Positions 25,966-49,227 are shown, counted from the first letter of the stretch. The stretch is 64,000 bases of DNA from Heteronotia binoei (GCF_032191835.1 NC_083228.1:83824001-83888000); one strand, 5' to 3'. Translations and numbers: made by a program. Notes: generated by a model from the sequence alone, not told the origin.

Positions 25966-25998
25966 ATGGTGAGCAGGAAGAAGGAAGTACCTTTACAG
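25966..25998 (+). CDS. NME9: NME9/TXNDC6-like gene, coding exon 1 (MVSRKKEVPLQ)
   Basis: Matches the human NME9/NME8 N-terminus (MGSRKKEIALQ); acceptor tag at 25959-25961, donor gttagt. Confidence 0.8.
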
Positions 25999-28900
25999 GT
26001 TAGTAAGAAATGCAAATATCGCCCCCACCCCCCATGCCTGTCACTGGAATGTCCTGCTAGTATGAAGAGGGTGGATTAAGTCCAAGATTGCATAAAAACA
26101 ATAGAGAGCAAGAACATTGTAGAATGTTGGACTGGAAACCTGGGTTAAAGTCCCAGCACATACAGAAAGTTTACTGGATGATATTGGGTCAGTTGTTATC
26201 TCTCAGCCTACTTCATAACATTATTGAGAGTGGGGACCATGTATGATATACATACATCTCTTTGCTGGAAGTTGGGATAAACCTGTAACAGCTCTTAAAT
26301 GTATGTAAATGTATGCATTCATTTCCCAGGTGCAACAAGTAGTACAATTTTTCCTTTCTGATGAATCAGAAAGAGAACATAAGAAGAAATAACCCCAACT
26401 CTGAAATTTTATATGTTGGAGAATAAGGTAGATTGAGAATCAGAAGCTAACTGTTAAGAGGAACAAGAACTGCAATAAGCTACCACTTCATAATTGTTTA
26501 TCTTCAGATAAACATTAAATATCCTTCTTAAAGAGATCAGTTAGCCAAATTCAGTTAATAATGTGTTGAAATGTATTGGTTGATCTAGCATTAGAGTTGG
26601 CCTTTGCTTCTCGGGAGAGCAGCAAGTATAACTGTGGTGGTACTTCGAGAATAAGAATATTAATTTTTGAATATGCATCTATATACAGTGCATATATTCA
26701 TTAAAAAAACATGTTTAAGGAAGCCTATTCAGATAAGAGTCTGTATGAATATATATTTCTTTTTTGAAAATTGAATCCATATGGGATATAATCTCTCTAA
26801 ATCCTGCCATCAAGTGGCCAGAAAAAGCAAATGATTATAACTTCAATTGGTTAAGTACTTACATCAGAGTAGACCTATTAATTTACCTGGAACTACTCTC
26901 ATTTGACTTTGAGGAAGGTTTTAATAGGATACCTTTTAAGTACTTTGCTATAAATAAACTGATACTCTGCTAATTAAACGTTTTGATGTTCCCTGTTTTA
27001 TTTAGATCTTCAAGAGTAATGTACATTGAATCTTGACATGCTTACTGAGAAAGAAGTGCCCTTGTTAAGTTTTTTCTAGAAAAGTACTTCCTAAGAGTGG
27101 ACTACCTCTTCCTTATGCTACTCCAGATGTTATTCTTTGTGCTAACCCTTAGGGATATTCAGGCAGCAATCCTAAAAGAAATTTCTTGGAGCAAGCCCTA
27201 ATAAATAAAATTGGACTTACTCCTGAATGGACCTGTTTAGGTTTGCTCTTTCTGAGGTCTTCAGGCTGGTCACATGTCACAGGCTGTCTCAGTTTCTGCC
27301 CCAGTCTTTAATACAGTCTACCAGAGCAAGAAAGAAGAGTACTTTATCCAGGGGTGTCAAAGTCATTTGTTATGAGGGCTGGATCTGACATAAATGGGAC
27401 CTTGTTGGGCCAGGCCATGTTGGGTTGGACCAGGCCATGTGTATACCTATATAAGATTAGATAGCAGAGATATAGATTTTATAAAGAACACAGAAAACAC
27501 AAATATATATATTGTTAAAAACATGCTTAAAATGTTAGCACTCATTGGTCTTAAAGATGCTTTCTTTGTATTTCTCCCATGGGACCCAGGGAACTGGGCA
27601 AAAGAAGCTCTAGCTTTTTCCTTCCTTCCCCAGGGGATTGGGGGAGGGGGGGAGCCTCAGCCAATAGAAGGAAGAGAGGCTTGGTTCAGTAGTTCTGCTA
27701 TGCAATTGAGAGAGCCTGACAAAGCAAGCTATTCCTCTCCCCTTCCTCCACAAGGGAGGCTCCTGCCTCAGCCAATGGAGAAAATAGAGGTTTTGTTAAC
27801 AGATTCTTTGTAACAGTCTACTGACAGACAAAGAACATTTTTATCATGTGTTATGTTAATTTTTATCTTTTCCCCAAAACAAGCTGTGGGTTTGTCCATA
27901 GAAGAATTGTCATGATAACTGAATTGTGGCTTTGATCTAGTAACTATTCTGATATAAAAGGTTCTGTTCAGACATTCTATGACTGGATAAAAGACTATGG
28001 TTGACAAGTGGGTACAACTTCCTTCCCTTCCTACATGAACTTTTTGAAACATACGTAGATATTACACATATTCATGCACACATCTCTGTGTACAGTTAGA
28101 AACTCTGCACAGGCTGCATAATGTGTTCCAGTGTTCAGTGCCCTTGGCAGTCAAAGTCTTGAGGGCCCCCTTGCAAATTATCTCAGAGTCAGAGCTCTTG
28201 CCACACTGCCCACAGCCTCCACTGCAGCCTGCGGGCACCTTCTCAGAAGCCCATTTGACAAAGCTGTGGGGGAGAGGCAGAGAGAGGCAAACTTAGCAAT
28301 GATGCTAGCAGCAGCCTCACCAGGCAAATTGGGTAAATTGCTGGCTGCATGTGCAGGCTCCGAGGGCTGCAAGCAGTGGGGAAACTGGGGGGGGGGGGAG
28401 CCAACTCAGGGCTCCTAAAGGTGTGGGCGGCGGGGGGGCCATAGACAAGTGCCTACTTGACCTAATTGTTAATCCGGCCCTGTCAATGCTAACAGAGTGA
28501 GGGAACAGCTTGCTACAAGCATTCATTGTCTGACCTTAGCATATCTGAAGTTCTGAGTTGGTTAGTTTCACACCCCTATTAATCAATCAGATGTCTGTTC
28601 AGAAGGAATACTTGACCACTCCTCTATTTGGATTGTAGTTTGTTAACAAATTATGAGCAGGACTCTTAAAACATTTTGGGGGAAAAGTTCAGCTGTTTTC
28701 CAAACATTTGAAATTGGATCAAAAATGATTTGACAATCTGCTTTCTCATGAAGTTTCCCCCATCTATAAAGAAGTGTATAAACTTCTTTATAAATTAAAA
28801 ACAATTTAAAAGGTATTTTCATTTCTGCAGCCAGGGAAAGTGGCAGAGTTGTGTATCATGTCTTTAGTTTAGTGGTGTCAATTTTGCCTGGCTGACTCAA

Positions 28901-29648
28901 TATCATTGGGTCCAGAATATTTTGTCCTTGTCTGTTAGTTAACTAAACTTTCATTGTATCTGGATGACAATTACCTTGGTATAGCTGTCTTCCTTCCCCA
29001 TCCATTTTCACTGGACAGGGAAGCAATCTAAAGAGTTGGTGTTCTTGTTTGTTTTGATCTTGATGGAAAGTGGCTGGAAAAGCTGTATGATTTGTCTTTC
29101 TGGTGTTCCAGCCTTGTGCTTTTTGCATCCCTGTCTGACTCCCAAAGCTGAATGTGCCTGTTTTGATATGTATTAACTGGATTTACATGCTCTGTTGCAC
29201 TGCTGCCTGGGATCTATGGTTTGATCCAGCTAGCTGAGCCTACACCAGCGTGATGAATGCTGCTGACTGATGAATGTCACCAACTGTGCAAGCAAAAGCA
29301 GCATATACATCCCACAGAGTTGTTTTTGAATGGCATATGACCTGCCCATGAGTTTGGGATAGTAATCCAAAAAGGCCTGTTAACTGTGAGTATACATTAC
29401 CAGTGGCTACCCAGCTAGCAGCCATATTGAATGTCACCACTGGGCAAATGCAAATGTACCCGAAATGCTGCCCATTCCTGAGGCTCTGAAATAAGGTGCT
29501 GAACTTTACATAAAGTAGGAATTGCAGACAAGGTAAATCAGAATATCAATAGCATTTTTGCCAGAATCTCAGCATCTCTGTTTTCAGACATTTGTGTCCT
29601 TAAAGGCCACTTCGCATTATTGAAAGATCTTCTGTTTAATTTACACAG

Positions 29649-29706
29649 ATGGTTGTCAATAATCAGGAACTTTGGGAAGAAATGCTGTGTTCCAGAGGGC
29701 TGATAG
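29649..29706 (+). CDS. NME9: NME9-like coding exon 2 (MVVNNQELWEEMLCSRGLI)
   Basis: Matches QELWEEMLSSKGLT; cag acceptor, gtaag donor, 58 nt. Confidence 0.9.
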
Positions 29707-29910
29707 GTAAGATTTTTGCTGCCAATATGTTCAGCAGTATTAATATATACTAACCATATATAGGTCAGGTTAGAAATTAAAATAGTGAAGGAATGTTACA
29801 TCCTTTTATTCCTTCTGCCGCAATGGGATTGTTATTAGTTATCAGAGCTAATATTCTTTAACTGACAAACTTCCTTTTGTTATAAATCTTAGAATCATAG
29901 AGTTGGAAGG

Positions 29911-30104
29911 CAATGTTCCCTCTTACCTGTGGAGTCTTGTGAGCAGAAATTCTACTTTGTGAGCTGCTAGCATTAAAGCTGTGAGCTACGGCATAAATTA
30001 GTTTGTTCTGGGGCCATTTTTCCTGAGCTAAGACAAAAATATGTGAGCCAGAAGCTAAAAAACTGTGAGCTAGCTCATACTAACTCAGCTTAGAGGGAAC
30101 ACTG
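29911..30104. mobile_element. hAT MITE
   Basis: TIRs caatgttccctct / agagggaacactg; perfect 8-bp TSD ttggaagg. Confidence 0.9.
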
Positions 30105-30495
30105 TTGGAAGGGACCTCCAAGGTCATCTAGTCCAACCACCTGCACAATGCAGGAAATTCGCAAATACCTCCCCCCACACCCCCCAGTTACAACTGCTCC
30201 ATGCCCAGAAGATGGCAAAAAAAAAAAAAATCTCCAGGATCCCTGGCAAAACTGGCCTGGAGAAAATTACTTCCTGACCGTGAAATGGTGATCAGCATTT
30301 CACTAGACATATAAAAAGAGGCCACACAAACTAAGCACTAACACAACCTTTTCTGCCCTCCCACTCATGATCTGCCAAAATTTGCAGAATCAGCATTGCT
30401 GTCAGATGGCCATCTAGCCTCTTTTTAAAAACCTCCAAAGAACAAGAGCCCACCACCTCCCTAGATAGCTTGTTCCACTGAGGTACTGCTCTAAC

Positions 30496-30689
30496 CAGTG
30501 TTCCCTCTAAGCTGAGTTAGCGTGAGCTAGCTCACAGATTTTTAACCTCCAGTTCACACATTTTTGTCTTAACTCGGAAAGGATGACCACAGAGTACAAT
30601 AATTTATGCAGTAGCTCACAACTTTAATGCCAGTAGCTCACAAAATAGAATTTTTGCTCACAAGACTCTGCAGCTTAGAGGGAACATTG
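30496..30689. mobile_element. hAT MITE, same family, opposite orientation
   Basis: TIRs cagtgttccctctaagctg / cagcttagagggaacattg; perfect 8-bp TSD gctctaac. Confidence 0.9.
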
Positions 30690-30717
30690 GCTCTAACTAT
30701 CAGAAAGTTCTTCTGAT

Positions 30718-31004
30718 AGAGCCAGTTTGGTTTAGTGGTTAAGTGTGCGGACTCTTATCTGGGAGAACCGGGTTTGATTCCCCACTCCTCCACTTGCACC
30801 TGCTGGAATAGCCTTGGGTCAGCCACAGCTCTGGCAGAGGTTGTCCTTGAAAGGGCAGCTTCTGTGAGAGCCCTCTCAGCCCCACCTACCTCACAGGGCG
30901 TCTGTTGTCAGAGAGGAAGATAAAGGAGATTGTGAGCCGCTCTGAGACTCTGAGATTTAGAGTGGAGGGCGGGATATAAATCCAATATCTTCTTCCTTCT
31001 TCTT
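30718..31004 (+). mobile_element. tRNA-derived SINE
   Basis: Near-identical to 20396-20670. Confidence 0.85.
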
Positions 31005-32589
31005 CATGTTTAGCCGGAAACTCTTTGATTTAATTTCAACCCATTGGTTCTGGTCTGACCTTCTGGAGCAACAGAAAACAACTCTGCACCATCCTCAATA
31101 TGACAGCTGTTCAAGAACTTGAAGATGGTTATCATATTGCCTCTCAGTCATCTCCTCTCCAGACCAAACATATCCAGCTCCTTCAGCCTTTCCTCATAGG
31201 ACTTGGCTTCCAAACCCCTCACCATTTTGTTGCCCTCCTCTGTACACATTCCAGCTTGTCCTTCTTATTTATCCTTCTTAAGTTGTGGTGCCCAAAACTG
31301 AACACAATACTCTAGGTGAGGTCTAACCAGAGCAGAGTAAAGTGATACCATCACTTTGCTTGATCTGACACAGCTGACTTTTGGTCTGCTAAAAGGCTTA
31401 TCTACACATGGCACATGAAGGCTACGAAAATTCTTCTTCATGGTGGCAACTCCACACAGGAGCCATAATGTATGGCACCATTATCCATAAGGATCTTCTG
31501 TAGCTCTGTGTTTCTATGCCAGTACTCCATGCCAATGGAGGTGGCTGATGCTGGTGGTCACAGATAGTATACAATATTGAAGATCTTGGAACTGTACCTG
31601 TGTGGAAATCTTTTTATTTTTTTAATGCTGTTTATAGTTAGGCATTCTCACTGAGGCTTAGAATTGCCAACTCCAATGCCACAGAGTTCATCCTTCAAAG
31701 CAGCCATTTTCTCCAGGGAGCTGATCTCTGCCAGCTAGAGATCAGTTGTAAAAGTGGGAAATCTCCAAGCCCCACTTGGAGGCTGGCAACCCTTATCAAA
31801 TGCAAAGCCCTTCATGGCCTTGGACCTTCATATGTGCAGGACTGCCTCTCCTCCTATCTCCTGACAAAACAACTTGCTGTTCTGGCCTTCCACAGGACCA
31901 CCCTGGAAATGTGCAAAATCATCAGCTGCAAAATCATCAGTGTATACATGCATTCACTGTAGTGGCCCCCACTCTATGGAATGGCCTGGATGAAGAGATT
32001 AGGAAGGTCCCTATACTTTTAGCTTTCTGCAAACTATGTAAAATAGAACTTTTCAAGAGGGAATTTTTATACAGGAATAGGGCTGCACTATAACAGAATG
32101 ATTCAGGAAAACATTTCAATAAAAAGAACGGAACTATGGAGTATACTACTAATATGTATACTAGTATACTACTAATATGTATTATCTTTTGCTATATATT
32201 TTGTATCTTGCTCTCACGGCATTATAGTTCTACTTATGTAATACCATTTATCCCACTGTTTAACATGTCAAACTTCATCTTTATGCCTTGTTTCAGATTT
32301 TTGCTATCCTAGTCCTGTTACATAGTTTATTATATGACTTCTGATCTTACAGATTGTACCGATTTACATGATGCAGTACACCTTGAGTCTCAATGAGAAA
32401 GGCAAACTATAAATAAGTAAATAAAAATTTGCAGGTGCTTGATGTGCAGCACAATCCTTTTGTGAGAGCTCAATTGAACAGTCCCGAGTAGGATTCTGAA
32501 TAGATCTGCTAAGGATGGCACTATAAATTTAGTATGTTCTGACATGTGTCAGTTTTGCATCCTTCTGAGACAGTTACATCTCTTTGCAG

Positions 32590-32693
32590 TGATAGATGTT
32601 TATCAGGCCTGGTGTGGTCCATGTAAACCAGTAGTAAACATCTTCAGGAAAATAAGACATCAACTTGAGGGTGACCTTCTGCATTTTGCTGTG
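32590..32693 (+). CDS. NME9: NME9-like coding exon 3, thioredoxin active site (VIDVYQAWCGPCKPVVNIFRKIRHQLEGDLLHFAV)
   Basis: Intact WCGPC; 104 nt restores phase 0 with exon 2; canonical splice sites. Confidence 0.93.
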
Positions 32694-33170
32694 GTAAGAT
32701 GTAGCTTCATATGTACAAAGTCTATCTGGCAGAGGACATCAGTGAAATGGCGCATGTGCTTCTGTGTTGCATGAGGGCTTTTCCAGTGCATTGATTCTGG
32801 GTCCAGAGGCAGGATCTGGGGGTTTAGAGGAAGTTTAGGATTTAGAGGGAGCAGAGTTCAGAGAAAGAAGGGGTGGGATTTTTTTGGAGTCACTGGCCAA
32901 ATTTTGCAAATATAATTTCCAAGGGGCTTATGGGGAGGAAGGGTATAGTAGACACCTTTCCTTATTCTATAAGTCACTCTTAGTGATTGACAAAAAAAAG
33001 AAGAAGTCTGGAGGACCTAATGATCTCCTGATGCCATCCCTTCTCTGCAACCATCTTTCTCCTTCAAAGTAAGGAGGAGCATTATGGTTTAGTGGCTAGC
33101 ACACTGCTCGTCCTAGTTTTATTCAGTGGGTTGGACTATTTGCATTGTCAGCAGAGGGCATGGGTAGAGA

Positions 33171-33385
33171 TTAGGGTTGTCAGCTCTGGACTGGGAAATG
33201 CCTGGAGATTTGGGGGGTAGAGCCTGGGTTGAGCAGTTTGGGCAGGGGAGGGACCTCAGCAGGGCATGATGCCATACAGTCTGCCCTCCAAAGCAGCCAT
33301 TTTCTTGACAGAAATTGATCTTGATCATCTGGAGATCAACAACAATAGCAGAAAATCTCCAGGTGCCACCTGGAAGTTGGCAACT
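33171..33385 (+). mobile_element. TAGGGTTGCCA-TIR non-autonomous DNA element (hAT/Tip100-like)
   Basis: tagggttgtc...ggaagttggcaactata; related copies at about 1370-1615, 8881-9210, 13470-13557, 31665-31792, 42597-43850 and 60129-60339. Confidence 0.6.
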
Positions 33386-36264
33386 ATAGCAGAGATAGAT
33401 CTTTCTAATCTTCAGTTTCTCCAGGAGTCACCTGTGACTGCCAAAAAGTCAGTGGGGTTGTGGGAGTCACATGGGTAAAAAGCAATATAGCATGAGTGCT
33501 CTTAGTAAAGAGGAAGTGCACAAAATCCTCTTCTAGCTTATTATGGCAGAACAGTATCTTGTGCTTGTGAAAGTCTTAAGCCAGTAGAAAGTATCCATAA
33601 AATCCAACCCATTATATCCAGAGATCACAGTAAGAAAGAGTGGAATCTGCTTGGATATACCTCTGGAAAGTTCTGGGATAAACTGTGCAAAGAGTACATC
33701 CACCGTTATGAACTTAGATAAAGTTTGTATTAGTTTAAATTGTTGTTGATATTCTCAAAGGATTGTGGGAATTGTGGTTAGAGATATCTGTCTATGATTT
33801 TTTTAGAAACAACTATCTCCATCTCACAGAACTACAATTCTAGGACTCTTTGGGGAAAGGAAATTACTGTTAATTTGGGCCTATTATGCACGAGTGTTTT
33901 CCCTCACTTTCACCAAGCATGTCCATTAGATTTTCTTTGTCTTTCTACATTGTTTTTCCTCCTTCAGCACTCAGTTGGCTTTCTGATCAGATGTAAAGAG
34001 AGATAGACAGTGGGATGGGAAGGCTAAAGCTTTGAAAACATTCCCCTTCATGCTTCAGTGAACAAAGTTTTTTGGGGGAACCATTTTGGCAGTCTCCAGA
34101 AGCCAAACATTAAAGTGGCAGCTGAACCACAAGGACCTCCTGCAAACTGCTGAATTTAAGAATCTCTTGGGATTGATCCATTTGGAGTGTTCTGTCTGCC
34201 AAGAGGACAGAGAATGGGTTCAGTGGGAAGAAGAAAATGCTGTACCTTTAAATGCTTGGAATTATGGGTTTTGTGGTTCTTTAGACTCTGTAGGTCAGGT
34301 GGGATTATATAGTTCCCCCTAATTGGCTAATTGTGGAAGGTTCAGCCACTTCTGAGGACCCGGGAAAGTTTATTGTCCCTTTCCTGTCTGTTTTACAATT
34401 CTTTGTTAAGCCTTTTGTTCAACATGGTGACCCAAGGGGATGTGTCTGTCTTTTCACCTCGCATTCATAACTTGTAAGAGCTGTTTCAGCATGCACGTCC
34501 CACTTGATGGCAGGATGCAGTGAGTACTCTGAAAATGCCTTGGGATGTCAATAAAGTCTGTAAAGTTCTGCAAGTGTGGGTGCGTGAGTTGATCACATCT
34601 GGAAACAGCTGTTAGAGAGCCACCCTAACAGCTGAGGCTCCAGAATTTAAGAATCTCTTGGGATTGATCCATTTGGAGGACAGAGTGCAATACGCACAGG
34701 ACAGGCTCTAAAATGCTGCCAAGTTCACAACCACTGTGCAAGATCAAATTAGAGGGGCTGTTCAGACTCACAGTATAATCAGTTGTTGCTGCTGTTTCAT
34801 ACCGGATTAAAAGTGGCTGATCAGACAGCAACATCTGCTTCCTGGTATTAACTCGTAGTAGCACCCCCCCAATCCTTCTCAGAACTGGAGTATTTTGATA
34901 CCTGCTCCTTTGTGGTGTTTTTTTGAGTTATCTGGATAGTTCTTGACCAACTTCCGGATGCCTGAAGGCTGTCCCGGAGCAAAAGAAGACTCCGATATCT
35001 GGTTTTTGGTCACCATTTTTTTTAGTACTTAGCGATATGCGCACAACTGCATAACCACATAATGTTTTAACCTATGTGCATAATGTGCACATGTGCATAA
35101 CATGCATAAAAGCGGAGAAAAAATGCATGGTGCCGTCGTGTGGACGGCAGAAGACAGTTTCACTGTGGAGTGATTCAAATTGCAGTATGGCAGTCTGATC
35201 GATAATATCTGGAACAAAGATATTCGGAACAGAACTGGGTCTGTTTAACACAGACTCAACACACTGTGTGAAAAGGGCCAGAGAATCACAAGGAAAAAAT
35301 CATGCAGATTTGCAAGGAAGGGCAGGAAATTAGTGTTACTATGCAGCTGGGCATAGATTAAAATATACCCTCATCTTTTTTTTTCAGTTTAGTGGGACAA
35401 GACTAAAAATGCTCTCCAGAGCTTCTGCCAGAGGACTCCTCCCTCATACAAATTACAAAGTATGGTAAAGTTGCAGCCAACTTTACACAGGCATGTGTGC
35501 ACGTACACGCACACACAGCCAACAATCACTGCTGCACCACCTTCTACCATACATTCTGTACAGTCAACATGTTCCCCTATATTATTGTGTGACTCTTTCT
35601 CATTTTCACAGTGACCGATATCACAGCATAGAATCCCCTAATGCTCGGCTATATGAAAAATCGGGCTTTGCAGTTGCTCAGTTCCAAAAATAGTCTGGTC
35701 AGTTTCAGCATCAAGGTTTCCACTTTTTGCCTTTGTTCCTTTTTATTCCCTTTCATTCAGTGAACTAATTCTAAAGTGCATGTGTAAAACCTGAACCAGG
35801 AGGATTTAAATGGAAGGTGACTGCTGGACACTACTGTGCAGCTGCAATAGGGCAATTATATAAATTTTGAAAACTTTGTACACCATCCCCAACACATCTC
35901 AAATGACATTCCACCCCAATTTAGAAAAGTTAGTTTTTAAAAATTGTAGCTGCAGAATAAATTCACCAGAGGAAAAAGAATGGCAGACACAGAATCTGAA
36001 GTCAAGATTAAAGGTTTACTACTCTAAAAATCTGCAGTAAGATGTGTGTGCTTAATGAGCCTTAGTTTTAGCTTGCAGTGAATCTTTGTACAGATATCGC
36101 ACAAATGAGTCAAAGTAACATAAAGCAGCAAAGATTGTGAAGCATGATAAACAACTGGTATTAAATACTGAATGAGAAATAGCTCACCCCTTTCTTACCT
36201 AAATGTAGTCACAATGTGAATGTTGGCTTTGAATAAAGCGTGTTGTTTATTTTCTTTTCATTAG

Positions 36265-36336
36265 GCTGAAGCAGATTCAATTGATGCCCTAGAGAAATAT
36301 CGTGGGAAATGTGAGCCTACATTTCTGTTTTTTGCT
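36265..36336 (+). CDS. NME9: NME9-like coding exon 4 (AEADSIDALEKYRGKCEPTFLFFA)
   Basis: Near-identical to human NME9 EKYRGKCEPTFLFYA; 72 nt, tag/gtaag. Confidence 0.93.
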
Positions 36337-36607
36337 GTAAGTTAGCACAATGCTTGAAATTTCATTTAAGATCTTGTGTTTATTTTAACTATGGTTAGTT
36401 TATAATTCAACCTACAAATGATCATTCAGATCCTGATTTGTCTTGACCAGTGCTGTTTTTATCACTTTCACTCTTTCTCTGTCTCTCCTGCAGAGCACTG
36501 ATTAGCATCTTTGTATGTGTTATGGTGACAGTGGCCCTGAGAATCAAGTTAGGATTAAACTAACATGTTCATATTCATACATCATGCAAAAATATAGTTA
36601 AGACTAA

Positions 36608-36721
36608 GGGTGTGTTCACATACTATACTAAATAATGTGTTTGGCAAGTGGATTTTTGTTATTCTTACACAGTAAAAACCCAGTTGCAAAATGCATTATT
36701 TTGTGTAGTGTGAACGCACCC
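36608..36721. mobile_element. PIF/Harbinger-type MITE
   Basis: TIRs gggtgtgttcaca / tgtgaacgcaccc, flanked by TAA on both sides. Confidence 0.75.
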
Positions 36722-36938
36722 TAACTATGGCTAATAAACCAATTGCAAGCCATGATTTCTGATCCTGATTTGATGTCTCCTGTCTCTGACTAACCACAGT
36801 GGTGCAGTGGACAGTCACACTAACCATAGTTAATTTAATTAACTCATGGCTGTGCATGACATCTGAACTGAGCCAGTATGTTGGCATAAATTATGCTTGA
36901 AATTGTAAAATTGTTTATTAATTTCTGCTTCCTTTCAG

Positions 36939-37055
36939 GGAGGAGAATTAGTAGCAGTTGTAAGAGGAGCAAATGCACCATTGCTACAGAAAACCATTCG
37001 GGAGCAGCTAGAAGCGGAAAAGAAGGTTTTGAACCACGGAGTGGAGAGAGTGGTG
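36939..37055 (+). CDS. NME9: NME9-like coding exon 5 (GGELVAVVRGANAPLLQKTIREQLEAEKKVLNHGVERVV)
   Basis: Near-identical to human NME9 GGELVAVVRGANAPLLQKTILDQLEAEKKVL; 117 nt. Confidence 0.93.
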
Positions 37056-37859
37056 GTAATGTAGTCTCTAGACACGCTGCAATTTTCTAAAGACTGTTTT
37101 CCCTTTCTAGATCATATTCATTTTCAAGTTGTGCAAGATGCTAACTCTGCCAAATCTCTTTTAAAAAATTCAGGACCAGAAGTAGAAGGTTCAAGTACAT
37201 CCTGAGCCTTATGAAGTAAGGCTGAGAATGCCCATGTAGTTGGAAAAGTGGTCTGCATTCTTGGTTTCTGCTGAAAAAAAATACTTTCTGCTGTCAAAAA
37301 CCTTCTTCAGTTTGATGTTCAAAAGGAGATAATGAACCCGAGTGTTCAGCTCCAGATCTTTTCAACAATACAATATCAATTTTATATCTTAAAAAAGAAA
37401 TGGAACTGCTTTATTTATTTGCTTTAAGAAATGTGTATCCTGCGCTCTCCAAAGTCTGCCCCCAGATCTGTGTGGGATTTTGCACATACTGAATGATAGC
37501 AATTAAACAGTTCTGGTCATATCACTATCTCTTGACTAGCTATACTGTGCAAGATTCTGTCTAGAGAAAGCAACTTGAAACTACAGTGCAGGGCATAGTA
37601 GGCTTAGGAATGTTTGGTTTCTACAAACTTGTTCACCTATACAGAACTTTCATATTCTTCTCTGGACATTCTCCACAAATCATGTGTAGCTTCTTCCTCT
37701 TCTACAAAAACAAAACAAGTTCCCAGACAGAACTGTAAAATACTGTGTCACATTCTGAAAAAGTTTAAAAAGTTACTAGAGATAGCCATAGTAGATCATT
37801 AAAAAAGACCAGATGGCTTTCTAAAACAGTCTCTAACTGTAATATTGTACTGATTACAG

Positions 37860-37956
37860 ATTCAGGATGAAGCCTTCCTTTGGGAAAAAGAAGATACTTC
37901 TGTTGAAGAAAAGGAAAAAGAGGAAGGGGAAGAAGAGGATAAAGAAGACAAAGCAG
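37860..37956 (+). CDS. NME9: NME9-like coding exon 6, acidic linker (IQDEAFLWEKEDTSVEEKEKEEGEEEDKEDKA)
   Basis: Begins like human IKDEAL; purine-rich; cag acceptor and ag|gtgtgt phase-1 donor; read-through would stop at TGA 37971-37973. Confidence 0.8.
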
Positions 37957-40900
37957 GTGTGTGGTTCTGCTGAATGCCATGGTCAGCATCACTGTTAAGT
38001 TCTCTTGGTACATGACAGTGAAAGATCTAAAATGCTTGAGATGTCACTGTTCTCCCGTGGTGGACTGGGATGTTAAAATAACCAGAGAGGAAGAAGAGTC
38101 AAGTGGTTCCTGCAATGCTGCAAGCACTGTGGGGCCTACTTGGCTCTGCTTTCTCCTAGGCACCAGTAACCATCCTGGGCAGAAACTTCCCAGGCAAACC
38201 CCAGGTGTTCACCCCACCCCAGGTGTTCACTTCTTTCTCTAGCAACCCGTGCAATCCTAAGCAAAGTTACATCCTATTAAGACCATGGACTTCAGTGGTC
38301 TTACAAGGGTATAATTCCAGTTGGCACTGCAGTTAACATACTCCTCCTGATGCTGCAGCTTATGTTGGACATCTGCTTTTACCTACTCAGAGATGCACAT
38401 GTTTCTTCTAAATCAGTACTCTTGGCTGCCAAGTAGTAGCTTCCCTTACCCTTTTTATTGCTTCACATTTCCAGTTTTGGCTGGTTTAACAATGCTTAGT
38501 TTGTTCCCTTTACCATTTCCCCCTTAAAAAATTATTAGAAAATTGAAGTTATTGGAATCCAGTGAAAGGCCCATGGAGAGCACTTGCTGACATGGATTTT
38601 TCCTGCCTCCCCATTCTCCCAGCAGTCATGGAAAAGCTAATGTTGAAGATTATGGGACTTGCATGGACAAAAAGGCACACAGTGCAGGGTCTGTTGTGAG
38701 GAAGATTCAGATGATATTGCTTCCACCTGCCTCATGCACCAATGACATCTCTTGTGCCAGCCAAAGCACAGTTGCCGTAACAGAAAAACAAAGAGAATTT
38801 TAGCTAGTTCCCCCTCTTTACTGCAGCGTTTTGTTCATGTGGGTTTTTCAGCCTCCAACAGCAGCTTTTCTGAAGTGTAAGGGAGTTGTTGGTAGAAGGA
38901 GGGCAAACAAGATCTGCTTCACTGAAGACTGTTGCACTCATGCTTCAGTGGATCTTTTTATAGGCTTATACTTTTAACTGCTCTAAGACATCAAGGGAGG
39001 ATGCAGCCTCTGTGATTCTTCTTGCCATTCCATTTGTCCACCTTCTTTTCTTCTGCTTGCTGTAGCAAGCACAAAGAAGAAGGTGACAGAATAGGGGTCA
39101 TGGCACAGTGATGCCATCCCCTTTTAGTACCTTATGCCATTTAAAGCTAAAGGCAGACTCCAGTCAAAACAGGGCAAGCTTAGTGATTTAGCTTTGTAAA
39201 TCCCACATTGGGTATTCAAGAGGAGTGTCTTTGACCCACGTTTTCACTTCCCTTATGTATGGAATCTTGTCCAAAGGAAAGAGATTCGTGTATCTCCCAT
39301 AGGGAGATGCATACTGCATAAGCACCACGCTTGAAAAGGTACAAGCAGCAGCCAATAATGTATCTTTTAGCAAGACACTGAAACTCAGGCCTTTTATTCC
39401 TGCCAACACTTTCCAATGGAAGCCTGCTGTGCCTGCAGCTGCCAATGCAGTGCAGTGACAACAGAGTTTCCAGATGGCAGCCATCCCACATTTTCTTTGC
39501 CCCAAACCCCATGATGACTGTTCCTCCCTTCTCCCATTCTGATATACCATTATATCAATTGCTAATTTAAAAAAACCTCCCCCCTCCCCAAGAAAAACCC
39601 TGGTGGCATGTGGGGGAGGATAGCTGCTGCAGGGTCTAAGGCAGGGAAAATGGCTGCTGTGTGGGAAGGACTGGGAAAATCCAGACTCTGTGCACCCTAC
39701 AGCAGCCAGCCAACTACAATGCTGTGAGAAAGCAGGGGGGAAAGTTCACTTAAATTACCAACAGCATCGAACCTGAGGGAGGATCACCCATGTGGCAACA
39801 GCCTCAAATGAATTATCCAGGGTAATGCATTAGCTGAGAGAATTTCTCTCTCTTGCTTGTCAGGAAACCAGGCCCTGTTTCCATTTCCATCTTGGCACCA
39901 CTGTTTGAAGCCTTGCTATGCTTGTTCAGCGGACTTCCTCATAGCATCACTGACTTTTTGGAACTATTAAGGAGGTTCCACTGAGCCCAAACCTATTATT
40001 TGCCAGAAAGTGGTGTACAACATAGTAATGTTTTAAAAGTATTTAATTAAAACCAGAGCAGTCGTATGCAGGATTATTTCAATCTAAGCATATTGATTTC
40101 AGTGGCCTTAGACTGGTATAAGTCTGCATAGAGTTGCACTGTTACTATGTTTGCTTTTATAAAATTTTAACAGAATGTCATTTTATGATTTTTACGAAGT
40201 TCAATAGATCTAGCCACTTTTTCACTCAGTCTTGTCCAATTGCCCTCCTTACTACTACCCCATATGGTGGTCCCATGATCACAGCATAGCCTTGTTAGTT
40301 GGCAGTGGTGGTCCTTTTTCATAACCAGAAAACCTGGCTGAATCCATCCTGCTGAACTGTTCATTTAGTGGTATGTGTTTTAATAATTCTGTAAACCATC
40401 ACAAATAATGGAGAATAGAGAAAATGTAATTAATGAATTTTTTACACTTAAAAGTAATTGAACAAAATTCATTTTGCATTTTGTTGTCCAAAATTCTAAA
40501 CACTGAATACAGGTGGTGAGTTTAGCTCTGGGTTAAATTAAGTTCTGCTCCAGTGATGTAAAAACGACTCAGGAGACAGATGGCCTTGACTGGCAGTCAT
40601 CTGCTAGCTACTCTGCCACTTAGGCCTGCCTCCAGAGATTGCCCATTGCTAATATCTCATGCATGATGGGTCCTTGTCTTTTTACTCCACAGTTCTTGAA
40701 TTTGTTTATTATCATATGATGAACTAGCTAATCCTATCTATGAAATCAAGTTCAACCAGCATATTATTTATTTACTTCATTTATAATTCTACCTTTATAA
40801 TTCAAACTCAAGGAAGACATATGTGAAAATATATACAATACTGATTTAAAAGATTAGTTACTGAGCATGCAACTTTGTAAAATCCAATAATGACCCATTA

Positions 40901-42760
40901 TGCATGCACAGCTTACTGCAGATTTTCCGAGAAATAAGCCTTTAAGCTTGATTTTGGATTCTGTTCCCGCCCTTATGCACAATTCTTTTTCATTCAGCAG
41001 CTACAGTTTAATATATATATATTTTTTAAATCAGGGTGGAGCATCACTTGTGACAGGGGGTGATGTCCAAAGGTTTTTTTTTTGTTAATTTATGCAATTG
41101 CCCTATTGCAGCTGCATAGTAGCATCCAGCAAGCATCTTCCATTTAAATCCTTCTGGTTCAGGTTTTGTGCATGCATTTTAGCTTTAGTTTGCTGGATGA
41201 AAGGTAACAGAAAGGAACCCAGGCAAATGGGGAAAACCCACTGTTAAAATTGACCAGACTTTTTCTACAACTGACAAGCAGCTGCAAAGCCCCGCTTTCC
41301 ATATTGTCAAGTACTAGGGGATTCTCTGCTGTGTTATCGACCACTGTGAAAGATGGGAAAGAGTTACACAGTCTCATAATATGGGGGAACATGATGAGTA
41401 TACAGAATGCATGGTAGATCCCACTGACACTGGAAGCTGTGATTGTTGGCAACATGTGTTTGTGTGTGTGATTATGTTTAGAGGTTCTCAGAAGGTCCAT
41501 GGGACTCAGCTGCCATTTGAATGTTAGGCTTCCAGAATAGCTCCCCCTAACTTTGTTTACTAAAGCATTAAAGGGGAGAATGTTTTCTTGGTAGGTAAAC
41601 TATTTTTTTAATTAAAGATTTTAGAGGGAGAGTTACACAAGGCATGGCAGTAATCTCAATCAAGTAGGGCTGCACAAGCAAATCCTAAATAAATGCTTCA
41701 CTTTAGCACAAAAATCAGTGGAACCCAATCCTAGGCATGCCTACTTAAAAGTAAGTCCCATAGAGTTCTGTGGGGCTTACTCCTAAGTAGGTATTCCTGG
41801 GATTTCAGATTGCAAGTATTCATTTGAAACTCTGCATTCTATTGATTTCTTAAGCAACACTTGTGGTGAGGCCCCCTGCATAAAAGGCAATGAGTTAATG
41901 ATGAAGAGGAACCTGATCCTAGGCATGCCAGGCATGCCTACTTAGAAGTAAGTCCCATTGAGTTCTGTTGGGCTTACTCCTTGAGTAAGTATTCCAGCCT
42001 GCAAGTAATTGTTTGCAACTCCACTCCTTTTAAATTTTCCTCATGTTGTTTTAATTTTTTTTACAAGTGGCATGAGACTAGTGTTAGTTTCATATCACTA
42101 GACTTATGCAGCTTGTAAAAAAAGTAAAATGAGGGAGAAATGGAGCTTGTACACCGATGAAGGGGGGAGAAGAGGTTTAGGTTTATTGGATTTATATCCC
42201 GCCCTCCCTGTCGAAGCAGGTGCAGGGCCTCTCACAATGGTGGAAGGTGCAGAGTGGGTGCACTGACCTCAGTGTGGGCAGTAAAGTGGCCTTTGAGAGG
42301 ATAAGAAAACAGTGGTTGGAGGGAAATCCAAGAGAATCTCTATGCTTTTGAATTACCTTCCGCTTGGAAGCAAAGCAAGAGAAAAAACAGCACAACAGCA
42401 CTCTCAGAAAACTTTGAAAACACCAACCAGAAAGCAACCGGAGAGCTGAAAGGAGGAAAAATAATACCAAATAAAAAAGAAAATCCAGTGAACATGCACG
42501 GTGAAAGTGAGACAAAACACCCGTGCATAATAGGTCAATGTCAAATAGTGATTGCTTTAAACAAGGATGGGCTAGGAAGTTAAAATAGCCCTCCTCTAGG
42601 GTTGCCAACCTCAGGTAGGAAATTCCTGGAGATATGGAGGCAAAATATGGGGAGGGTGGAGTTTGGGGAGGGGAGGGAGCTTGACAGAGATGTCATGTTA
42701 TAGAGTCCATCCTTCAAAGTTGCAATTTTCTGGGAGAATGCCAGGCCCCACCTGGAGGCT

Positions 42761-43826
42761 ATACAACACACAGAGAGTAACACAGCAAAAGGACAAAAAA
42801 ATCAAAGGTACATAACCCACCATGAAAACCAGCTTCTATTATTAAATTATACAAGGTCAACAAAAATAAACACAAATTCCATCATCATAAATTACAAAAC
42901 AACCATAATTTTTAGTCCTTAATAGAAAAGGAAGCAATAGCACCAAGAGTCTTTCTTTTCATCCTATGGTAAAACTTCCCATCTTATTCCATGCAATCCT
43001 GGTGTAGAACTCCAGATGTTTAATGTCTGTCCAAAGATGCAGCCAATAATCCAAGTTTCCAAGGACAAGGTCGTACTAAACCCTTGTTTCGCGTGAGCGT
43101 CTTCAAGCTGCAACAATCCTGAATAACATGAATAATATACAATGATACAACCATATGCACATAAGCCATAAAAAATTTTAAACCCTGAATAAAATCAACA
43201 AACCTCTTAGTAATTTCTCTTAAGTGTTAGGCCAAATAGCCAGCATATTTGAAGGAACACCTACAAGGTGCTAGAGTGAGTCATGCTAAATGGCTTATAT
43301 GCAGCAGGTGCAACAATTCAAAAAGTTCCTTAAAGCTACAGAGTACCCAGCTACAGTAATGCTAAAAACTTATTATAACAAATATCCAAAGCACATGCCA
43401 ATAAATTATTTTATAAACAGTATATTTTATAAAAAACATGCCAAATCCCAATCACTATTTAAACCATGAGGAAACATCATCCCTAATTTAAAGATCATGC
43501 GCATCTCCTTCTGATGTAACCATCTGCTACAATCCATCCTACCTTGCAAACGCATTGGAAACTTAAGAAGTACACAAAAACGTAGAGCACTTCATTCAGT
43601 TTAATCATGATCCAGACTCTTTTTTACCATAGGATGAAAAGAAAGTTTTACCATAGGATGAAAAGAAAGACTCTTGGTGCTATTGCTTCCTTTTCTATTA
43701 AGGACTAAAAGTTATGGTTGTTTTGTAATTTATGATGGTGGAATTTGTGTTTATTTTTGTTGACCTTGTATAATTTAATAATAGAAGCTGGTTTTCACGG
43801 TGGGTTATGTACCTTTGATTTTTTTG
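42761..43826 (-). mobile_element. 5-prime truncated Penelope-like retroelement with inverted terminal duplication, inserted in a TAGGGTTGCCA MITE
   Basis: 14-bp TSD cccacctggaggct (42747-42760, 43827-43840); minus strand encodes the GIY-YIG C-terminal motif LHQKEMRMIFKLGMMFPHGLNSDWDLACFL* (stop 43427-43429); 184-bp inverted arms 42794-42977 and 43643-43826. Confidence 0.85.
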
Positions 43827-45086
43827 CCCACCTGGAGGCTGGCAATCCTACCTGGAACAAGCCAATCTGTGTGGCCCTTGTTGCACAACAACTTGGTGCT
43901 ACAGGGCTACTCAGCTCAGCACCACCAGCAATGGACCTTCTCCCACAAACGGGAGGTTGTGCAGGAGGAGGCAAGCAGCGAATTGACACCAATTATCATT
44001 TCCACTGAAAAGGCTGAGACAAGTGGCCTTCTAGGCACTGGTAGAGTTGTTGGGGCTTGGCCCTGCACACTTCTTGCCCCCAAGGGTAGCAGCACACTGA
44101 GAAATTTCCCTGTGAGTCCACCCATGACTTCGAACCTTAAAGAATTTGTGGAGTGGTTGTGCAAATAAATGCATCTTTCTGTCTCTCATTGTATTTAATA
44201 TAATGGTAGAAGCCCAGTTGAAGGCTCTGGACTCCTGTACTAAAGTAACCTTGGTTTCCTTTCTTTCCAATATGCTTAGGGAAAAACACACATCTATATT
44301 TGCTGTAACTTTAGCTGCAGTGTCATTAAGCTTTGACTGTAAAAAATTAAGTACAGAGTGAAAATAGATGAATATTTAATTTCACAGTCATGCTGTGTAG
44401 TTCAAAGACTGAAACAACAATTTTGCCATTTAAAAATCAAACAAATATTGTTCCTTTGATGTTGCCTTCAATATTTACATTGCTTTCTTTTTATAATTTC
44501 TTCCTCTCTTTTCTTCCTAGATTAAGTCACCCATTTATCTTCCAGAACTGGCTTTCCAACTGCCATTTTAAAGATGATGAAAAATGTTATGTTTTTCTAT
44601 TGTAGTAGAGGCAAAAAAGAAGGGTAAAGGTGTTGGCAACTCACTGTCAAAAAGGGGGAAAGTATGTTTCAGGTAGAGGCAGTCTGTGTCAAAATTCATG
44701 TTACTACAGGGGGAAAAAAATCCTGAGCAGATCTACTTGGAAGTAAGTTCCATTTTATCCAATTTAAATTATAGTTTTCCCACTCTTAGGAAAGTGTTCT
44801 CAGAACTACAGCCTTAATGCTTAACCATCATTAATCACAATATAATGGTCTTCTGAATAATGCTACAAGTATACAATTGAGAAACAGTTGTACAGTAATT
44901 AGTGCCATATTAATTTGTGCAGTTCTAGGGGGTGCAGTTTGGTTGATTGTTGATTTTGAACCTACTGTGAGACATATGACACATATCTTTTATCTCCAGA
45001 GCTTTGCTATTTGCTTCACTGTAATGTTTGCTTCAGAACAATGAAGCTTTTCCTGGCTTTCTCCATCAGATGTTTCCATGCTGAGG

Positions 45087-45284
45087 CAGGGCTTTTTTGT
45101 GGTGAAACTCACTGGTACTGAATATCAGCATTCGGCACCTTTTTTCAGGACTCTCCCAAGTCCTGATCTTTATGTGCTGCACCACCTCACTCAGCCAGAG
45201 AGAAGGGAACCTCAGGAATAGCCTGAGTGGGCATCTACAGCTGGAAATAAATGCTGGCACTTTTTTAAAACAAAAAAAGCACTG
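45087..45284. mobile_element. hAT-like MITE (CAGGGCTTTTTT TIR family)
   Basis: TIRs cagggctttttt / aaaaaaagcactg; TSD tgctgagg / tgttgagg. Confidence 0.7.
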
Positions 45285-45404
45285 TGTTGAGGTAATCTAA
45301 AACAGAACAGAATAATTAGCAATTCTGCAAACCTTCAGGGTATCAAATAATCAACAGAACTGTACATTTGTGGCAGCTATCTTTAACCCAGCTATGGTTG
45401 TCAT

Positions 45405-45523
45405 CAGGCCTTTTTTTGTAGAAAAAGCCCAGCAGGACCTCATTTGCATATTAGGTCACACCCCCAACACCAAGCCAGCTGGAACTGTGTTCCTGTGCAT
45501 TCATGCTAAAAAAAAAAGCCCTG
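45405..45523. mobile_element. hAT-like MITE with octamer/CACCC module
   Basis: TIRs caggccttttttt / aaaaaaagccctg; TSD gttgtcat / gttgccat; contains ctcatttgcatattaggtcacacccc. Confidence 0.8.
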
Positions 45524-45798
45524 GTTGCCATAGTAATATTACAGTTAATTTCAGTTTATAATATGTAGGATTTACAGTTATTTTCTAACCTTAGTAGGGG
45601 CTGCAGTTTTTATGTAAATTAACAATTGTCACCTTGGATTCCAACATGGCAGGCACACACACATTGGCAACATGACTTTCAACCACAGGTAGCCAACTTC
45701 TATCAGAAATATACTTTTGCTGCTCATGGCAATGAGTTGACAGTGGCAATAAGATCCAGGAGACATTATTGATAAATTAATGTTATGATTACTGTTTT

Positions 45799-45840
45799 AA
45801 TAAAGAAATTCTAATACATATGTTGTTGTTTTTTCTTTTT
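45799..45840 (+). terminator. Candidate polyadenylation signal with downstream GU/U-rich element
   Basis: AATAAA then tgttgttgttttttctttt about 17 nt downstream. Confidence 0.4.
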
Positions 45841-46329
45841 CACATCTACACTTTAAGCTATCTGACCATAGTAAAATGCCAAAGGATGCTTCATGAACCA
45901 AAGATTTATTTATTTACACTCCAGTATTTTTCTCCAGTGGGAACCTGAAGCAGCCAAAAATACTTATCTGGAAATAAGCCCCATTGAACACACAGTGCAA
46001 TTTTATGCTGCCTGTCCATTAAAGTTAATGGGTATAGACTGGTGTAACATTGCATACGACTGCACTGTTACTCTCCTACTTTGCCGTCGGAAAGGTAGGC
46101 TCCAAATCTAAACACACAAGGGATGAAGTCCTACTAAATTTAATGAGATTAATTTCTGAGTTTAAGTGTTTAGGATTGCACGGGTACATTCCTAAGGGTT
46201 TACTCTCAGGAAACTGATCACTGTATCTCACGCCACTTACAGTTGGAATATGGTACACAAAATCATGAAGCCTCTACTGGAGTTTTTGCTTTGTTTTCTA
46301 GCGATGTTTTTGTTTGAACACGGGGAAAT

Positions 46330-46920
46330 TTTACCTTCGATTTTACCTTTCCATTCCTGATGCGGGGAAGGGCGAGCGGGCGAAGACAGAAACCCCTAGT
46401 TCTATTAATACATTTTAAGAAAACCGTATCATTAAATAAATCGTGTTCAATGAACATTTGAGATTCAAATTGATACTATTCGTATGCGACATCTCCCATC
46501 CATCGCCAGTCAAAATACAAAGGAATTCAATTATTACGAGAATACCGAGTTTAGGGCAATTTCCGGAGCTCATTTTTACGCCGGAGCCAGAAGAGGGCGC
46601 GATGAAATCTGAAGTTTAGCCGGCAGAAACGTCTGCGCTGTCCCTTTAAACGGACGCCGGGCAAGAGGCTGCGGTGGCTCGGGCGGAAGTAAATGGCTGC
46701 GGTTGAAAGATCAAGGGGGTGGTAGCGGCAGGATTCTTGGGTTGTGAGGAAACCCCTGGGTATGTGACCGGGTCCACCCTGTTTGTCTCTTTTGTAGCGT
46801 CAGCCCGCTAAGCCTGACAGGATCCGAATTTGTGACGCTCCTCGTGGTCGGGTCGAGTACAGTCAGCCTCTTGTCAGAAGCCAAGAAACGGCAAGACCAG
46901 GCAGCAGTGTCCTGGCTTTA
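46330..46920 (+). promoter_or_regulatory. VPS8: CpG island, VPS8 promoter and non-coding first exon
   Basis: CpG-rich; ETS/GABP site GCGGAAGT (46683-46690) followed by YY1-like AAATGGCTGC; candidate donor g|gtatgt near 46759. Confidence 0.75.

Positions 46921-49181: not shown

Positions 49182-49184
<3 letters not shown>

Positions 49185-49227
<43 letters not shown>

What the first reader, a model, noticed from the sequence alone, without database searches (positions are those of the whole stretch)
25966..46330. NME9/NME8-family gene that appears to encode a thioredoxin-only protein, with no NDP-kinase exons before VPS8
Seen: six in-phase exons (160 codons) encode a complete WCGPC thioredoxin domain and an acidic linker. 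In human NME9 the next exons encode the NDK domain (TLAIIKPDAV, FYxxH, NAVHGS). I found none of these motifs in the gap-free 8.4 kb between exon 6 and the VPS8 CpG island. Known: NME8/NME9 (TXNDC3/TXNDC6) are Trx-NDK fusion proteins of cilia and flagella, related to the sea-urchin outer-arm dynein intermediate chain IC1. Inference: this locus may make a roughly 161-168 aa stand-alone ciliary thioredoxin with a conserved catalytic CXXC, a domain architecture I do not recognise as described for this family. It could have arisen by truncation at a rearrangement next to VPS8, or represent a separate ancestral paralog.
Basis: partly seen in the sequence, partly recalled or inferred. Interest (0 to 1): 0.72.

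Follow-up and report, generated by a model that had tools for sequence, protein, structure and literature searches.

The report
Gecko NME9 gene lacking its kinase half
This gecko gene is the counterpart of human NME9, a small part of the motor that beats cilia, but in reptiles and birds it keeps only the thioredoxin half; databases already list the short protein, though I found no paper that describes it.

Summary
The window is Heteronotia binoei. The gene has seven exons, not six. Exon 6 (37861-37957) splices to a terminal exon at 44521 that adds two bases and a TAA. The product is a 161-aa protein identical to the RefSeq model "thioredoxin domain-containing protein 6".

No NDK coding sequence exists anywhere in the 64 kb by tblastn or by exon-level HMMs. 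Echidna NDK exons served as a positive control at E 1e-13 to 1e-22.

A spliced contig from another gecko joins all seven exons. Short thioredoxin-only TXNDC6 models (about 130-180 aa) are annotated in geckos, other lizards, a snake, tuatara and many birds.

A thioredoxin-domain tree puts them in one clade inside tetrapod NME9/TXNDC6, apart from NME8. Frogs, caecilians and a chimaera have thioredoxin plus three NDK domains, echidna two, and the wallaby and cow one each. The sauropsid form is therefore a truncated orthologue, not a separate paralogue.

dN/dS on the thioredoxin domain is 0.1-0.3. Its likely role is an LC3-type light chain of the outer dynein arm.

The gene models are already in databases. 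I found no paper that describes this architecture. Interest is moderate.

The parts
23874..23887 (+). Candidate RFX X-box-like palindrome (GCTGCCATGGGAAC) in the GC-rich region that probably holds the promoter and a non-coding first exon
   Evidence: It has 2 mismatches to the X-box consensus, and matches in the window as a whole are at chance level. The same motif sits at the orthologous place in Sphaerodactylus (L003 6668) within a 69%-identical block. A Podarcis isoform model starts in the equivalent exon. This is a hint only.
25966..25998 (+). Coding exon 1 (residues 1-11, ATG at 25966; an AG acceptor lies just upstream at 25960-25961)
29649..29706 (+). Coding exon 2 (residues 12-30 plus the first base of codon 31)
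32590..32695 (+). Coding exon 3 (residues 31-65) with the WCGPC active site
36265..36336 (+). Coding exon 4 (residues 66-89), including the conserved CEP motif, taken here to be the cis-proline position
36939..37055 (+). Coding exon 5 (residues 90-128): last strands and the long C-terminal helix of the thioredoxin fold
37861..37957 (+). Coding exon 6 (residues 129-160 plus one base): disordered acidic tail, ending in phase 1 at a GT donor
44521..45820 (+). Terminal exon 7: two bases complete Asp161, TAA at 44523-44525, then 3' UTR. The 3' end is approximate: transcript similarity reaches 45643 and an AATAAA lies at 45799.
   Evidence: The annotated gene end falls at 44525. A polypyrimidine tract and AG precede 44521. 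The spliced contig L005 joins exon 6 to 44519 onward and stays colinear to 45643. Poly(A) signals were located.
16523..17761 (+). Upstream neighbour: single-exon SLC35G2 (412 aa, EamA domain)
46250..47000 (+). CpG island, the presumed VPS8 promoter, about 0.5 kb past the TXNDC6 3' end
   Evidence: CpG observed/expected is 0.8-1.2. The block is conserved in Sphaerodactylus.
48829..64000 (+). VPS8 coding exons, from the annotated ATG to the end of the window

Best explanation
This is the Heteronotia binoei orthologue of NME9/TXNDC6. It has seven exons. The last exon contributes two bases and a stop codon, then the 3' UTR. The 161-aa product consists of a thioredoxin fold (residues about 11-122, WCGPC intact) and a disordered acidic tail. 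It has no nucleoside-diphosphate-kinase domain.

Shown:
- The short form is the annotated state in lepidosaurs and birds.
- The thioredoxin domain is under purifying selection.
- A spliced contig from another gecko, read here as a transcript, carries the same exon 6-to-7 junction.

Inferred, evolution: the short form arose once, before the lepidosaur-bird split. It came from loss of the 3' NDK-coding part of an ancestral gene that encoded thioredoxin plus three NDK domains. Mammals shortened the same gene less: two NDK domains in echidna, one each in the wallaby and cow.

Inferred, function: the protein works as the LC3-type thioredoxin light chain of the outer dynein arm of motile cilia and sperm flagella. 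It would dock through its thioredoxin domain on a heavy-chain neck, as human TXNDC6 does in the axoneme structure 8J07. Its vicinal cysteines could sense or relay redox state. The NDK module would then be dispensable for that role.
For: Gene structure:
- Exon-by-exon identity to P0001, and window identity to L001.
- Exon 7 with an immediate TAA.
- The spliced 1468-nt contig L005 from another gecko is colinear with all seven exons and at least 1.1 kb of 3' UTR.
- The crane gene range also ends at AG|GT TAA.

Absence of NDK:
- tblastn finds only the thioredoxin exons.
- NDK HMMs find nothing below E about 0.2 in the window, in Sphaerodactylus or in the crane. Echidna exons score 1e-13 to 1e-22 as the control.

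Distribution and orthology:
- Short thioredoxin-only TXNDC6 models (about 130-180 aa) occur in about a dozen squamates, tuatara and many birds.
- Pfam domain counts are 3 NDK in frog and chimaera, 2 in echidna, 1 in wallaby and cow, 0 here.
- In the tree the sauropsid clade has support 98/95. It sits inside tetrapod TXNDC6, and the NME8 clade is separate at 99/94.
- Exon borders and phase match echidna.
- ARMC8, DBR1 and SLC35G2 are neighbours in different lineages.

Selection: dN/dS on residues 1-128 is 0.18-0.32 among geckos and 0.10-0.16 between geckos and the crane.

Function:
- The sequence matches human TXNDC6 in the axoneme structure 8J07 at E 2.4e-64, and Chlamydomonas outer-arm LC5 and LC3 at 1e-18 and 2e-17.
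- The AlphaFold model superposes on 8j07_v1 with rmsd 1.0 A and target TM-score 0.91.
- Only 133 residues of the human chain are modelled in 8J07.
- A review identifies TXND6 as LC3 bound to the DYH9 neck and calls the function of its NDPK domain unknown (PMC10886578).
- Xenopus Nme9 co-purifies with Dnai2 (PMC7785291).
Against: - There is no expression or protein data from this species.
- L005 comes from another gecko, and I could not read its run metadata, so a processed genomic copy is not formally excluded.
- The rest of the Heteronotia genome was not searched for detached TXNDC6-type NDK exons.
- Association with dynein is inferred from orthology and fold only.
- Recombinant human NME9 showed no thioredoxin activity (PMC2777172, PMC13256974), so a redox role is uncertain.
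- Turtles and crocodilians were not sampled.
- The deep nodes of the tree are unresolved.
Confidence: 0.8

Rival explanations
1. The gene still encodes an NDK domain, but its exons are misassembled elsewhere or too diverged to see.
For: Exon 6 ends at a strong donor in phase 1, as in echidna where the next exon starts the NDK domain. Only 64 kb of the genome was examined.
Against: The same thioredoxin-only layout with VPS8 downstream is seen in three independent assemblies: Heteronotia, Sphaerodactylus and Grus. A spliced contig joins exon 6 to the stop-bearing exon 7. Exon-level HMMs that detect every echidna NDK exon find nothing here. The crane has only 268 bp between the gene end and VPS8.
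Confidence: 0.03
2. It is a decaying remnant (pseudogene) left after a truncating rearrangement.
For: Two thirds or more of the ancestral protein is gone. The acidic tail evolves fast, with dN/dS above 1 on small counts. The Heteronotia branch is somewhat long.
Against: The thioredoxin domain has dN/dS of 0.1-0.3 across geckos and between gecko and crane. WCGPC and the conserved proline are invariant or nearly so in 32 sequences. All splice sites are intact. The reading frame is kept in lepidosaurs and birds alike.
Confidence: 0.03
3. It is an old, separate thioredoxin-only paralogue rather than a truncated NME9.
For: Stand-alone thioredoxin light chains exist in Chlamydomonas outer arms.
Against: The tree nests the sauropsid clade among tetrapod TXNDC6 proteins that have NDK domains. 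Exon borders are identical to echidna TXNDC6 exons 2-6. ARMC8 is adjacent in both crane and cow, and DBR1 in the frog. No second TXNDC6-type gene appeared among the sauropsid hits listed.
Confidence: 0.04
4. The protein is a functional thioredoxin but no longer a dynein subunit. For example, it could be a soluble redox protein of ciliated or germ cells.
For: Losing the NDK part could have changed its partners. No localisation data exist for any sauropsid.
Against: It is 75% identical to the part of human TXNDC6 that is ordered on the dynein arm, with 1.0 A rmsd. Only that part is modelled in the human axoneme. An X-box-like motif at the presumed promoter is conserved between two geckos (weak evidence).
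Confidence: 0.1

Closest known systems
Mammalian NME9 / TXNDC6 / Txl-2 (outer dynein arm light chain LC3 of human respiratory cilia, PDB 8J07)
   Same: It is the orthologous gene by tree, exon structure and neighbouring genes. The thioredoxin domain is about 75% identical with the same WCGPC. The fold superposes at 1.0 A.
   Different: The wallaby and cow proteins carry one NDK domain after the acidic linker, and echidna carries two. The gecko protein stops one codon after the linker.
Amphibian, chimaera and ray-finned fish TXNDC6 (about 600 aa)
   Same: They share the TXNDC6-type thioredoxin domain, and the tetrapod members group with the gecko in the tree. The frog gene lies next to DBR1.
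   Different: They have three NDK domains, the layout usually called NME8-like. Desvignes et al. 2009 listed them as Nme8 (PMC2777172).
NME8 / TXNDC3 (Sptrx-2)
   Same: It has an N-terminal thioredoxin domain with WCGPC and is axonemal.
   Different: It forms a separate clade (99/94) with different signature residues and three NDK domains. It is retained as a full-length gene in birds, crocodile and echidna. Desvignes et al. 2009 list it for Anolis and chicken (PMC2777172).
Chlamydomonas outer-arm light chains LC3 and LC5, and Tetrahymena LC3BL
   Same: They are stand-alone thioredoxins of 129-156 aa with a CXXC, bound to heavy-chain tails. After human TXNDC6, the Chlamydomonas chains are the next-best structure and sequence matches (PMC10886578).
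   Different: They are only about 30% identical. The gecko protein reached this layout secondarily, by losing NDK domains, and it has an acidic tail.

Membership tests
NME9/TXNDC6 orthologous group | The thioredoxin domain groups with TXNDC6 and not with NME8 in a phylogeny | tested here: met
   The sauropsid clade (98/95) lies inside the tetrapod TXNDC6 group. The NME8 clade is separate at 99/94.
NME9/TXNDC6 orthologous group | Same exon borders and phases in the thioredoxin and linker part | tested here: met
   Gecko exons cover residues 12-30, 31-65, 66-89, 90-128 and 129-160. Echidna exons cover about 10-30, 31-65, 66-89, 90-128 and 129-153. Both have a phase-1 junction after exon 6.
NME9/TXNDC6 orthologous group | Conserved genomic neighbourhood | tested here: inconclusive
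   The crane has ARMC8-like > TXNDC6 > VPS8. The cow has NME9 > < ARMC8-like. The frog has DBR1 > TXNDC6 > < TMEM237. Geckos have SLC35G2 > TXNDC6 > VPS8. Members of one gene cluster recur, but their order and orientation differ. That these genes all lie at human 3q22.3 is from memory, except NME9 itself (PMC13256974).
NME / NDPK protein family (Pfam NDK, PF00334) | At least one NDK domain | tested here: not met
   Pfam finds only Thioredoxin in P0001. tblastn and NDK HMMs find nothing in the window. By domain content this protein is not an NDPK-family member, although its gene is the NME9 orthologue.
Thioredoxin family (PF00085) | Thioredoxin fold with the CXXC active site and the conserved proline | tested here: met
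   PF00085 matches at E 4e-11, above the gathering score. WCGPC is present, and P83 in the CEP motif is invariant. The AlphaFold model has a thioredoxin fold with block-mean pLDDT of 75-90 over residues 11-122.
Thioredoxin family (PF00085) | Disulfide reductase activity | not testable with these tools
   Human NME9 was reported to be inactive with thioredoxin reductase (PMC2777172, PMC13256974). Nothing is known for sauropsids.
Outer-dynein-arm LC3-type thioredoxin light chain | Structural match to the chain docked on the heavy-chain neck | tested here: met
   Foldseek rank 1 is 8j07_v1 (E 4e-20, target TM-score 0.91, rmsd 1.0 A, 75% identity). Ranks 2 and 5 are Chlamydomonas LC5 and LC3.
Outer-dynein-arm LC3-type thioredoxin light chain | Physical presence in the outer dynein arm | not testable with these tools
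   Inferred from orthology only.

The most novel reading that the evidence does not exclude
NME9 is not a eutherian novelty. It is an ancient vertebrate paralogue of NME8 that started with three NDK domains and was eroded from its 3' end independently in amniotes: two domains in echidna, one each in the wallaby and cow, none in sauropsids. The sauropsid loss dates to before the lepidosaur-bird split and goes with a new 3' neighbour, VPS8. Sauropsids would then be a natural knockout showing that the NDK module is dispensable for the LC3 role in the outer dynein arm. The lost function may be covered by NME8, or by the NDK domain that non-mammalian DAAP1 carries.
Probability: 0.4. Interest if true: 0.55.

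Novelty: new variant of a known kind. Interest (0 to 1): 0.42.

Why it matters
Reviews up to 2026 still describe NME9 as a mammalian partial copy of NME8 and call the function of its NDPK domain unknown (PMC2777172, PMC13256974, PMC10886578). The data here point to a different history. The NME9 lineage occurs in tetrapods with three NDK domains in amphibians, and TXNDC6-type genes with three also occur in fishes. Amniotes then trimmed the gene to different extents.

Birds and lepidosaurs kept only the thioredoxin domain, under purifying selection since before the two lineages split. That makes them a ready comparison for asking what the NDK domain of the dynein light chain does. It also suggests that the thioredoxin domain alone is enough for docking.

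For annotation, the short sauropsid TXNDC6 models are probably correct and not fragments.

Tried and rejected
1. Exon 7 as a relic of the first NDK exon. By eye, its in-frame translation and a few DNA words resemble the echidna exon that encodes the start of the NDK domain, and both junctions are phase 1. nhmmer in both directions did not pick the matching sites (best E 0.5-1.5, at other places). The NDK HMMs did not report it either. This reading is not supported.

2. A gecko profile of exon 7 did not find the crane exon 7 by nhmmer. The case that the two are homologous rests on shared features only. These are the same phase, a polypyrimidine tract, the AG|NT TAA layout, and 11 of 14 identical bases by my count of the sequences printed.

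3. A 14-aa NDK-like match on the minus strand at 62305-62346, inside a VPS8 intron, recurred with several queries (E 0.5-0.7). It stands alone and is at chance level.

4. Outgroup neighbourhoods:
   - The main Xenopus and sea-bass proteins were not on record.
   - The caecilian gene spans 330 kb with no informative neighbour.
   - The pipefish gene sits inside a SMARCAL1-like gene.
   - The echidna has no neighbour within 10 kb.
   - Only the Eleutherodactylus frog was informative.

5. The Xenopus protein P0070 proved to be a compact, processed-looking copy inside an A2M-like gene. It was used only as a source of NDK sequence.

6. An X-box scan of the window gives chance-level counts overall.

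7. The search of earlier findings returned nothing relevant.

Full report
**What is in the window**

The window carries N only at 5070-5215 and 9465-9626. On the + strand, six exons with canonical borders encode an NME9-type thioredoxin domain and an acidic stretch:
- e1 25966-25998
- e2 29649-29706
- e3 32590-32695, with WCGPC
- e4 36265-36336
- e5 36939-37055
- e6 37861-37957

A word search with the open stretch around exon 3 returned a 161-aa RefSeq protein, [quoted passage not shown] (P0001). Each window exon translates to the matching part of P0001 at 100%. The locus fetched for P0001 is base-identical to window 15966-54525. The window is therefore Bynoe's gecko.

Exons were searched by reference, and P0001 stood in for the whole protein.

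**The missed exon**

Exon 6 ends one base into a codon at a good GT donor. The annotated gene range ends at window 44525. At that place a long polypyrimidine tract and an AG precede 'AT TAA'. The junction completes Asp161 and stops translation at once.

A 1468-nt assembled contig from a public sequencing run of another gecko (L005) is colinear with all seven exons. It crosses the exon 6-to-7 junction exactly. It then follows the window for another 1.1 kb, to about 45643. An AATAAA lies at 45799. The simplest reading is a spliced mRNA whose last exon is almost all 3' UTR. I could not read the run's metadata, so a processed genomic copy is not formally excluded.

**No NDK anywhere in the window**

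Three tests found nothing:
- Regular expressions for the NDK motifs.
- tblastn with cow, sperm whale, seal, shrew, horse, frog and arowana NME9 proteins. Only the thioredoxin exons hit, and everything else has E above 0.08.
- HMMs built from NDK domains 1, 2 and 3 of twenty TXNDC6 proteins, run against all stop-free pieces of the six frames of the window, the Sphaerodactylus locus and the crane locus. The best E was about 0.2-0.5.

The same HMMs found every NDK exon in the echidna locus at E 1e-13 to 1e-22. Single-exon sensitivity is therefore adequate.

**Neighbours**

Upstream lies single-exon SLC35G2 at 16523-17761. Downstream lie a CpG island at about 46250-47000 and the VPS8 start codon at 48829.

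Sphaerodactylus has the same SLC35G2-TXNDC6 order, and a block matching the gecko VPS8 CpG island lies downstream. The whooping crane has an ARMC8-like gene, then TXNDC6, then VPS8 only 268 bp after the gene end. The crane's gene range also ends at an acceptor followed by 'GT TAA'. This is the same layout of two bases plus TAA as in the gecko.

**How widespread the short form is**

Thioredoxin-only TXNDC6 models of about 130-180 aa are annotated in:
- Geckos: Heteronotia, Sphaerodactylus, Eublepharis.
- Other lizards: Hemicordylus, Elgaria, Anolis, Sceloporus, Phrynosoma, Podarcis.
- A snake, tuatara and many birds.

Lepidosaurs and birds bracket all living sauropsids. Turtles and crocodilians were not sampled.

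**Where it came from**

A search with a frog NDK-containing relative and Pfam scans give these domain counts:
- Thioredoxin plus 3 NDK in Xenopus and Callorhinchus by Pfam. Other frogs, caecilians and ray-finned fishes have proteins of similar length (about 580-610 aa).
- 2 NDK in echidna (473 aa).
- 1 NDK in wallaby and cow.
- 0 NDK in sauropsids.

Birds, crocodile and echidna also have a full NME8/TXNDC3.

A maximum-likelihood tree of the thioredoxin domain used 43 proteins and 128 columns. The 14 sauropsid proteins form one clade (98/95) inside a tetrapod TXNDC6 group with frogs, caecilians and mammals (86/77). NME8-type proteins of amniotes, sturgeons and gar form a separate clade (99/94). 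Deeper nodes are unresolved.

Echidna TXNDC6 has the same exon borders through exon 6 and the same phase-1 junction. Its exon 7 begins the NDK domain.

Gene order differs by lineage. In a frog the gene lies between DBR1 and TMEM237. In the cow its 3' end faces the 3' end of an ARMC8-like gene. In the crane an ARMC8-like gene lies upstream in the same orientation.

The gene is therefore the NME9 orthologue and not a separate paralogue. Its 3' flank has been rearranged more than once. The VPS8 adjacency is not seen in the frog or the cow.

**Is it functional?**

Nei-Gojobori estimates were made codon by codon within exons. For residues 1-128, dN/dS is:
- 0.23, 0.32 and 0.18 for the three gecko pairs.
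- 0.16 and 0.11 for gecko against crane, where dS is saturated.

The acidic tail gives values above 1 on very few sites.

In a 32-sequence alignment, W38, G40, C42 and P83 are invariant, and C39 and P41 nearly so.

**What it probably does**

P0001 matches human TXNDC6 in the respiratory axoneme structure 8J07 at E 2.4e-64. The next matches are the Chlamydomonas outer-arm light chains of 14 and 16 kDa.

An AlphaFold model shows a thioredoxin fold over residues 11-122 (block-mean pLDDT 75-90) and a disordered tail from residue 134. Foldseek ranks 8j07_v1 first, with rmsd 1.0 A and 75% identity. Only 133 residues of that 330-aa human chain are modelled, which I take to be the thioredoxin part.

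A 2024 review names TXND6 as LC3, bound to the DYH9 neck, and calls the function of its NDPK domain unknown (PMC10886578). Xenopus Nme9 co-purifies and co-localises with Dnai2 (PMC7785291).

I therefore infer an LC3-type light chain of the outer dynein arm that docks through the thioredoxin domain. This is inference from orthology and fold. No sauropsid localisation data exist, and human NME9 lacked thioredoxin activity in vitro.

**Literature and novelty**

Desvignes et al. 2009 found Nme9 only in eutherians and listed the fish and frog TXNDC6 genes as Nme8 (PMC2777172). A 2026 review repeats that NME9 is an incomplete duplicate of NME8 (PMC13256974). Searches for TXNDC6 with chicken, or for NME9 with NDK domain, found no description of a thioredoxin-only form.

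The gene models are public and the gene is a known one. The finding is thus a lineage-wide variant of a known kind, not a new system.

**Dead ends**

The idea that exon 7 is a relic of the first NDK exon did not pass nhmmer in either direction. A 14-aa NDK-like match at 62305-62346 on the minus strand is at chance level.

Noticed in passing
window 23874-23887 (+); L003 6668-6681: A palindromic X-box-like motif (GCTGCCATGG[G/A]AAC) lies in the GC-rich region about 2 kb upstream of the ATG exon. It is kept at the orthologous place in Sphaerodactylus. A Podarcis isoform model begins in the equivalent exon. It could be an RFX site of a ciliary gene promoter.
   Followed up: partly
window 62305-62346 (-): A 14-residue stretch in a VPS8 intron resembles the 'HGKTDEIIMKIQ' part of the first NDK exon (E about 0.5-0.7). 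It is isolated and at chance level.
   Followed up: partly
L002 10001-11275 (Xenopus tropicalis): A 350-aa TXNDC6-like model occupies only 1275 bp inside an A2M-like gene. It looks like a processed copy fused to a repeat-derived C-terminus.
   Followed up: no
window 31800-32069 (+): An open stretch in TXNDC6 intron 2 is similar to the repeat-derived C-terminus of the Xenopus model P0070 (tblastn E 6e-4). It is probably an interspersed-repeat ORF remnant.
   Followed up: no
P0038 (Sphenodon punctatus model): The tuatara model reads WSGPC instead of WCGPC, so the first active-site cysteine is replaced. I did not check whether this is real or a sequence or model error.
   Followed up: no
L006 51032-51523 (echidna TXNDC6 intron): Three extra copies of a 12-residue piece of an NDK exon ('SEIEIAEREHPG') lie at 228-nt spacing just downstream of the real exon. 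This is a small tandem duplication in the intron.
   Followed up: no
window 37861-37957: The acidic tail exon changes much faster than the thioredoxin domain, with dN/dS above 1 on about 16 synonymous sites. It varies in length and charge pattern among squamates and birds.
   Followed up: partly
L004 17330-17390 (Grus) and bird isoforms P0021, P0025, P0030: Birds have two adjacent GT donors at the end of exon 6. Their annotated isoforms either read through into the intron or splice to the 'GT TAA' exon, giving different C-termini.
   Followed up: partly
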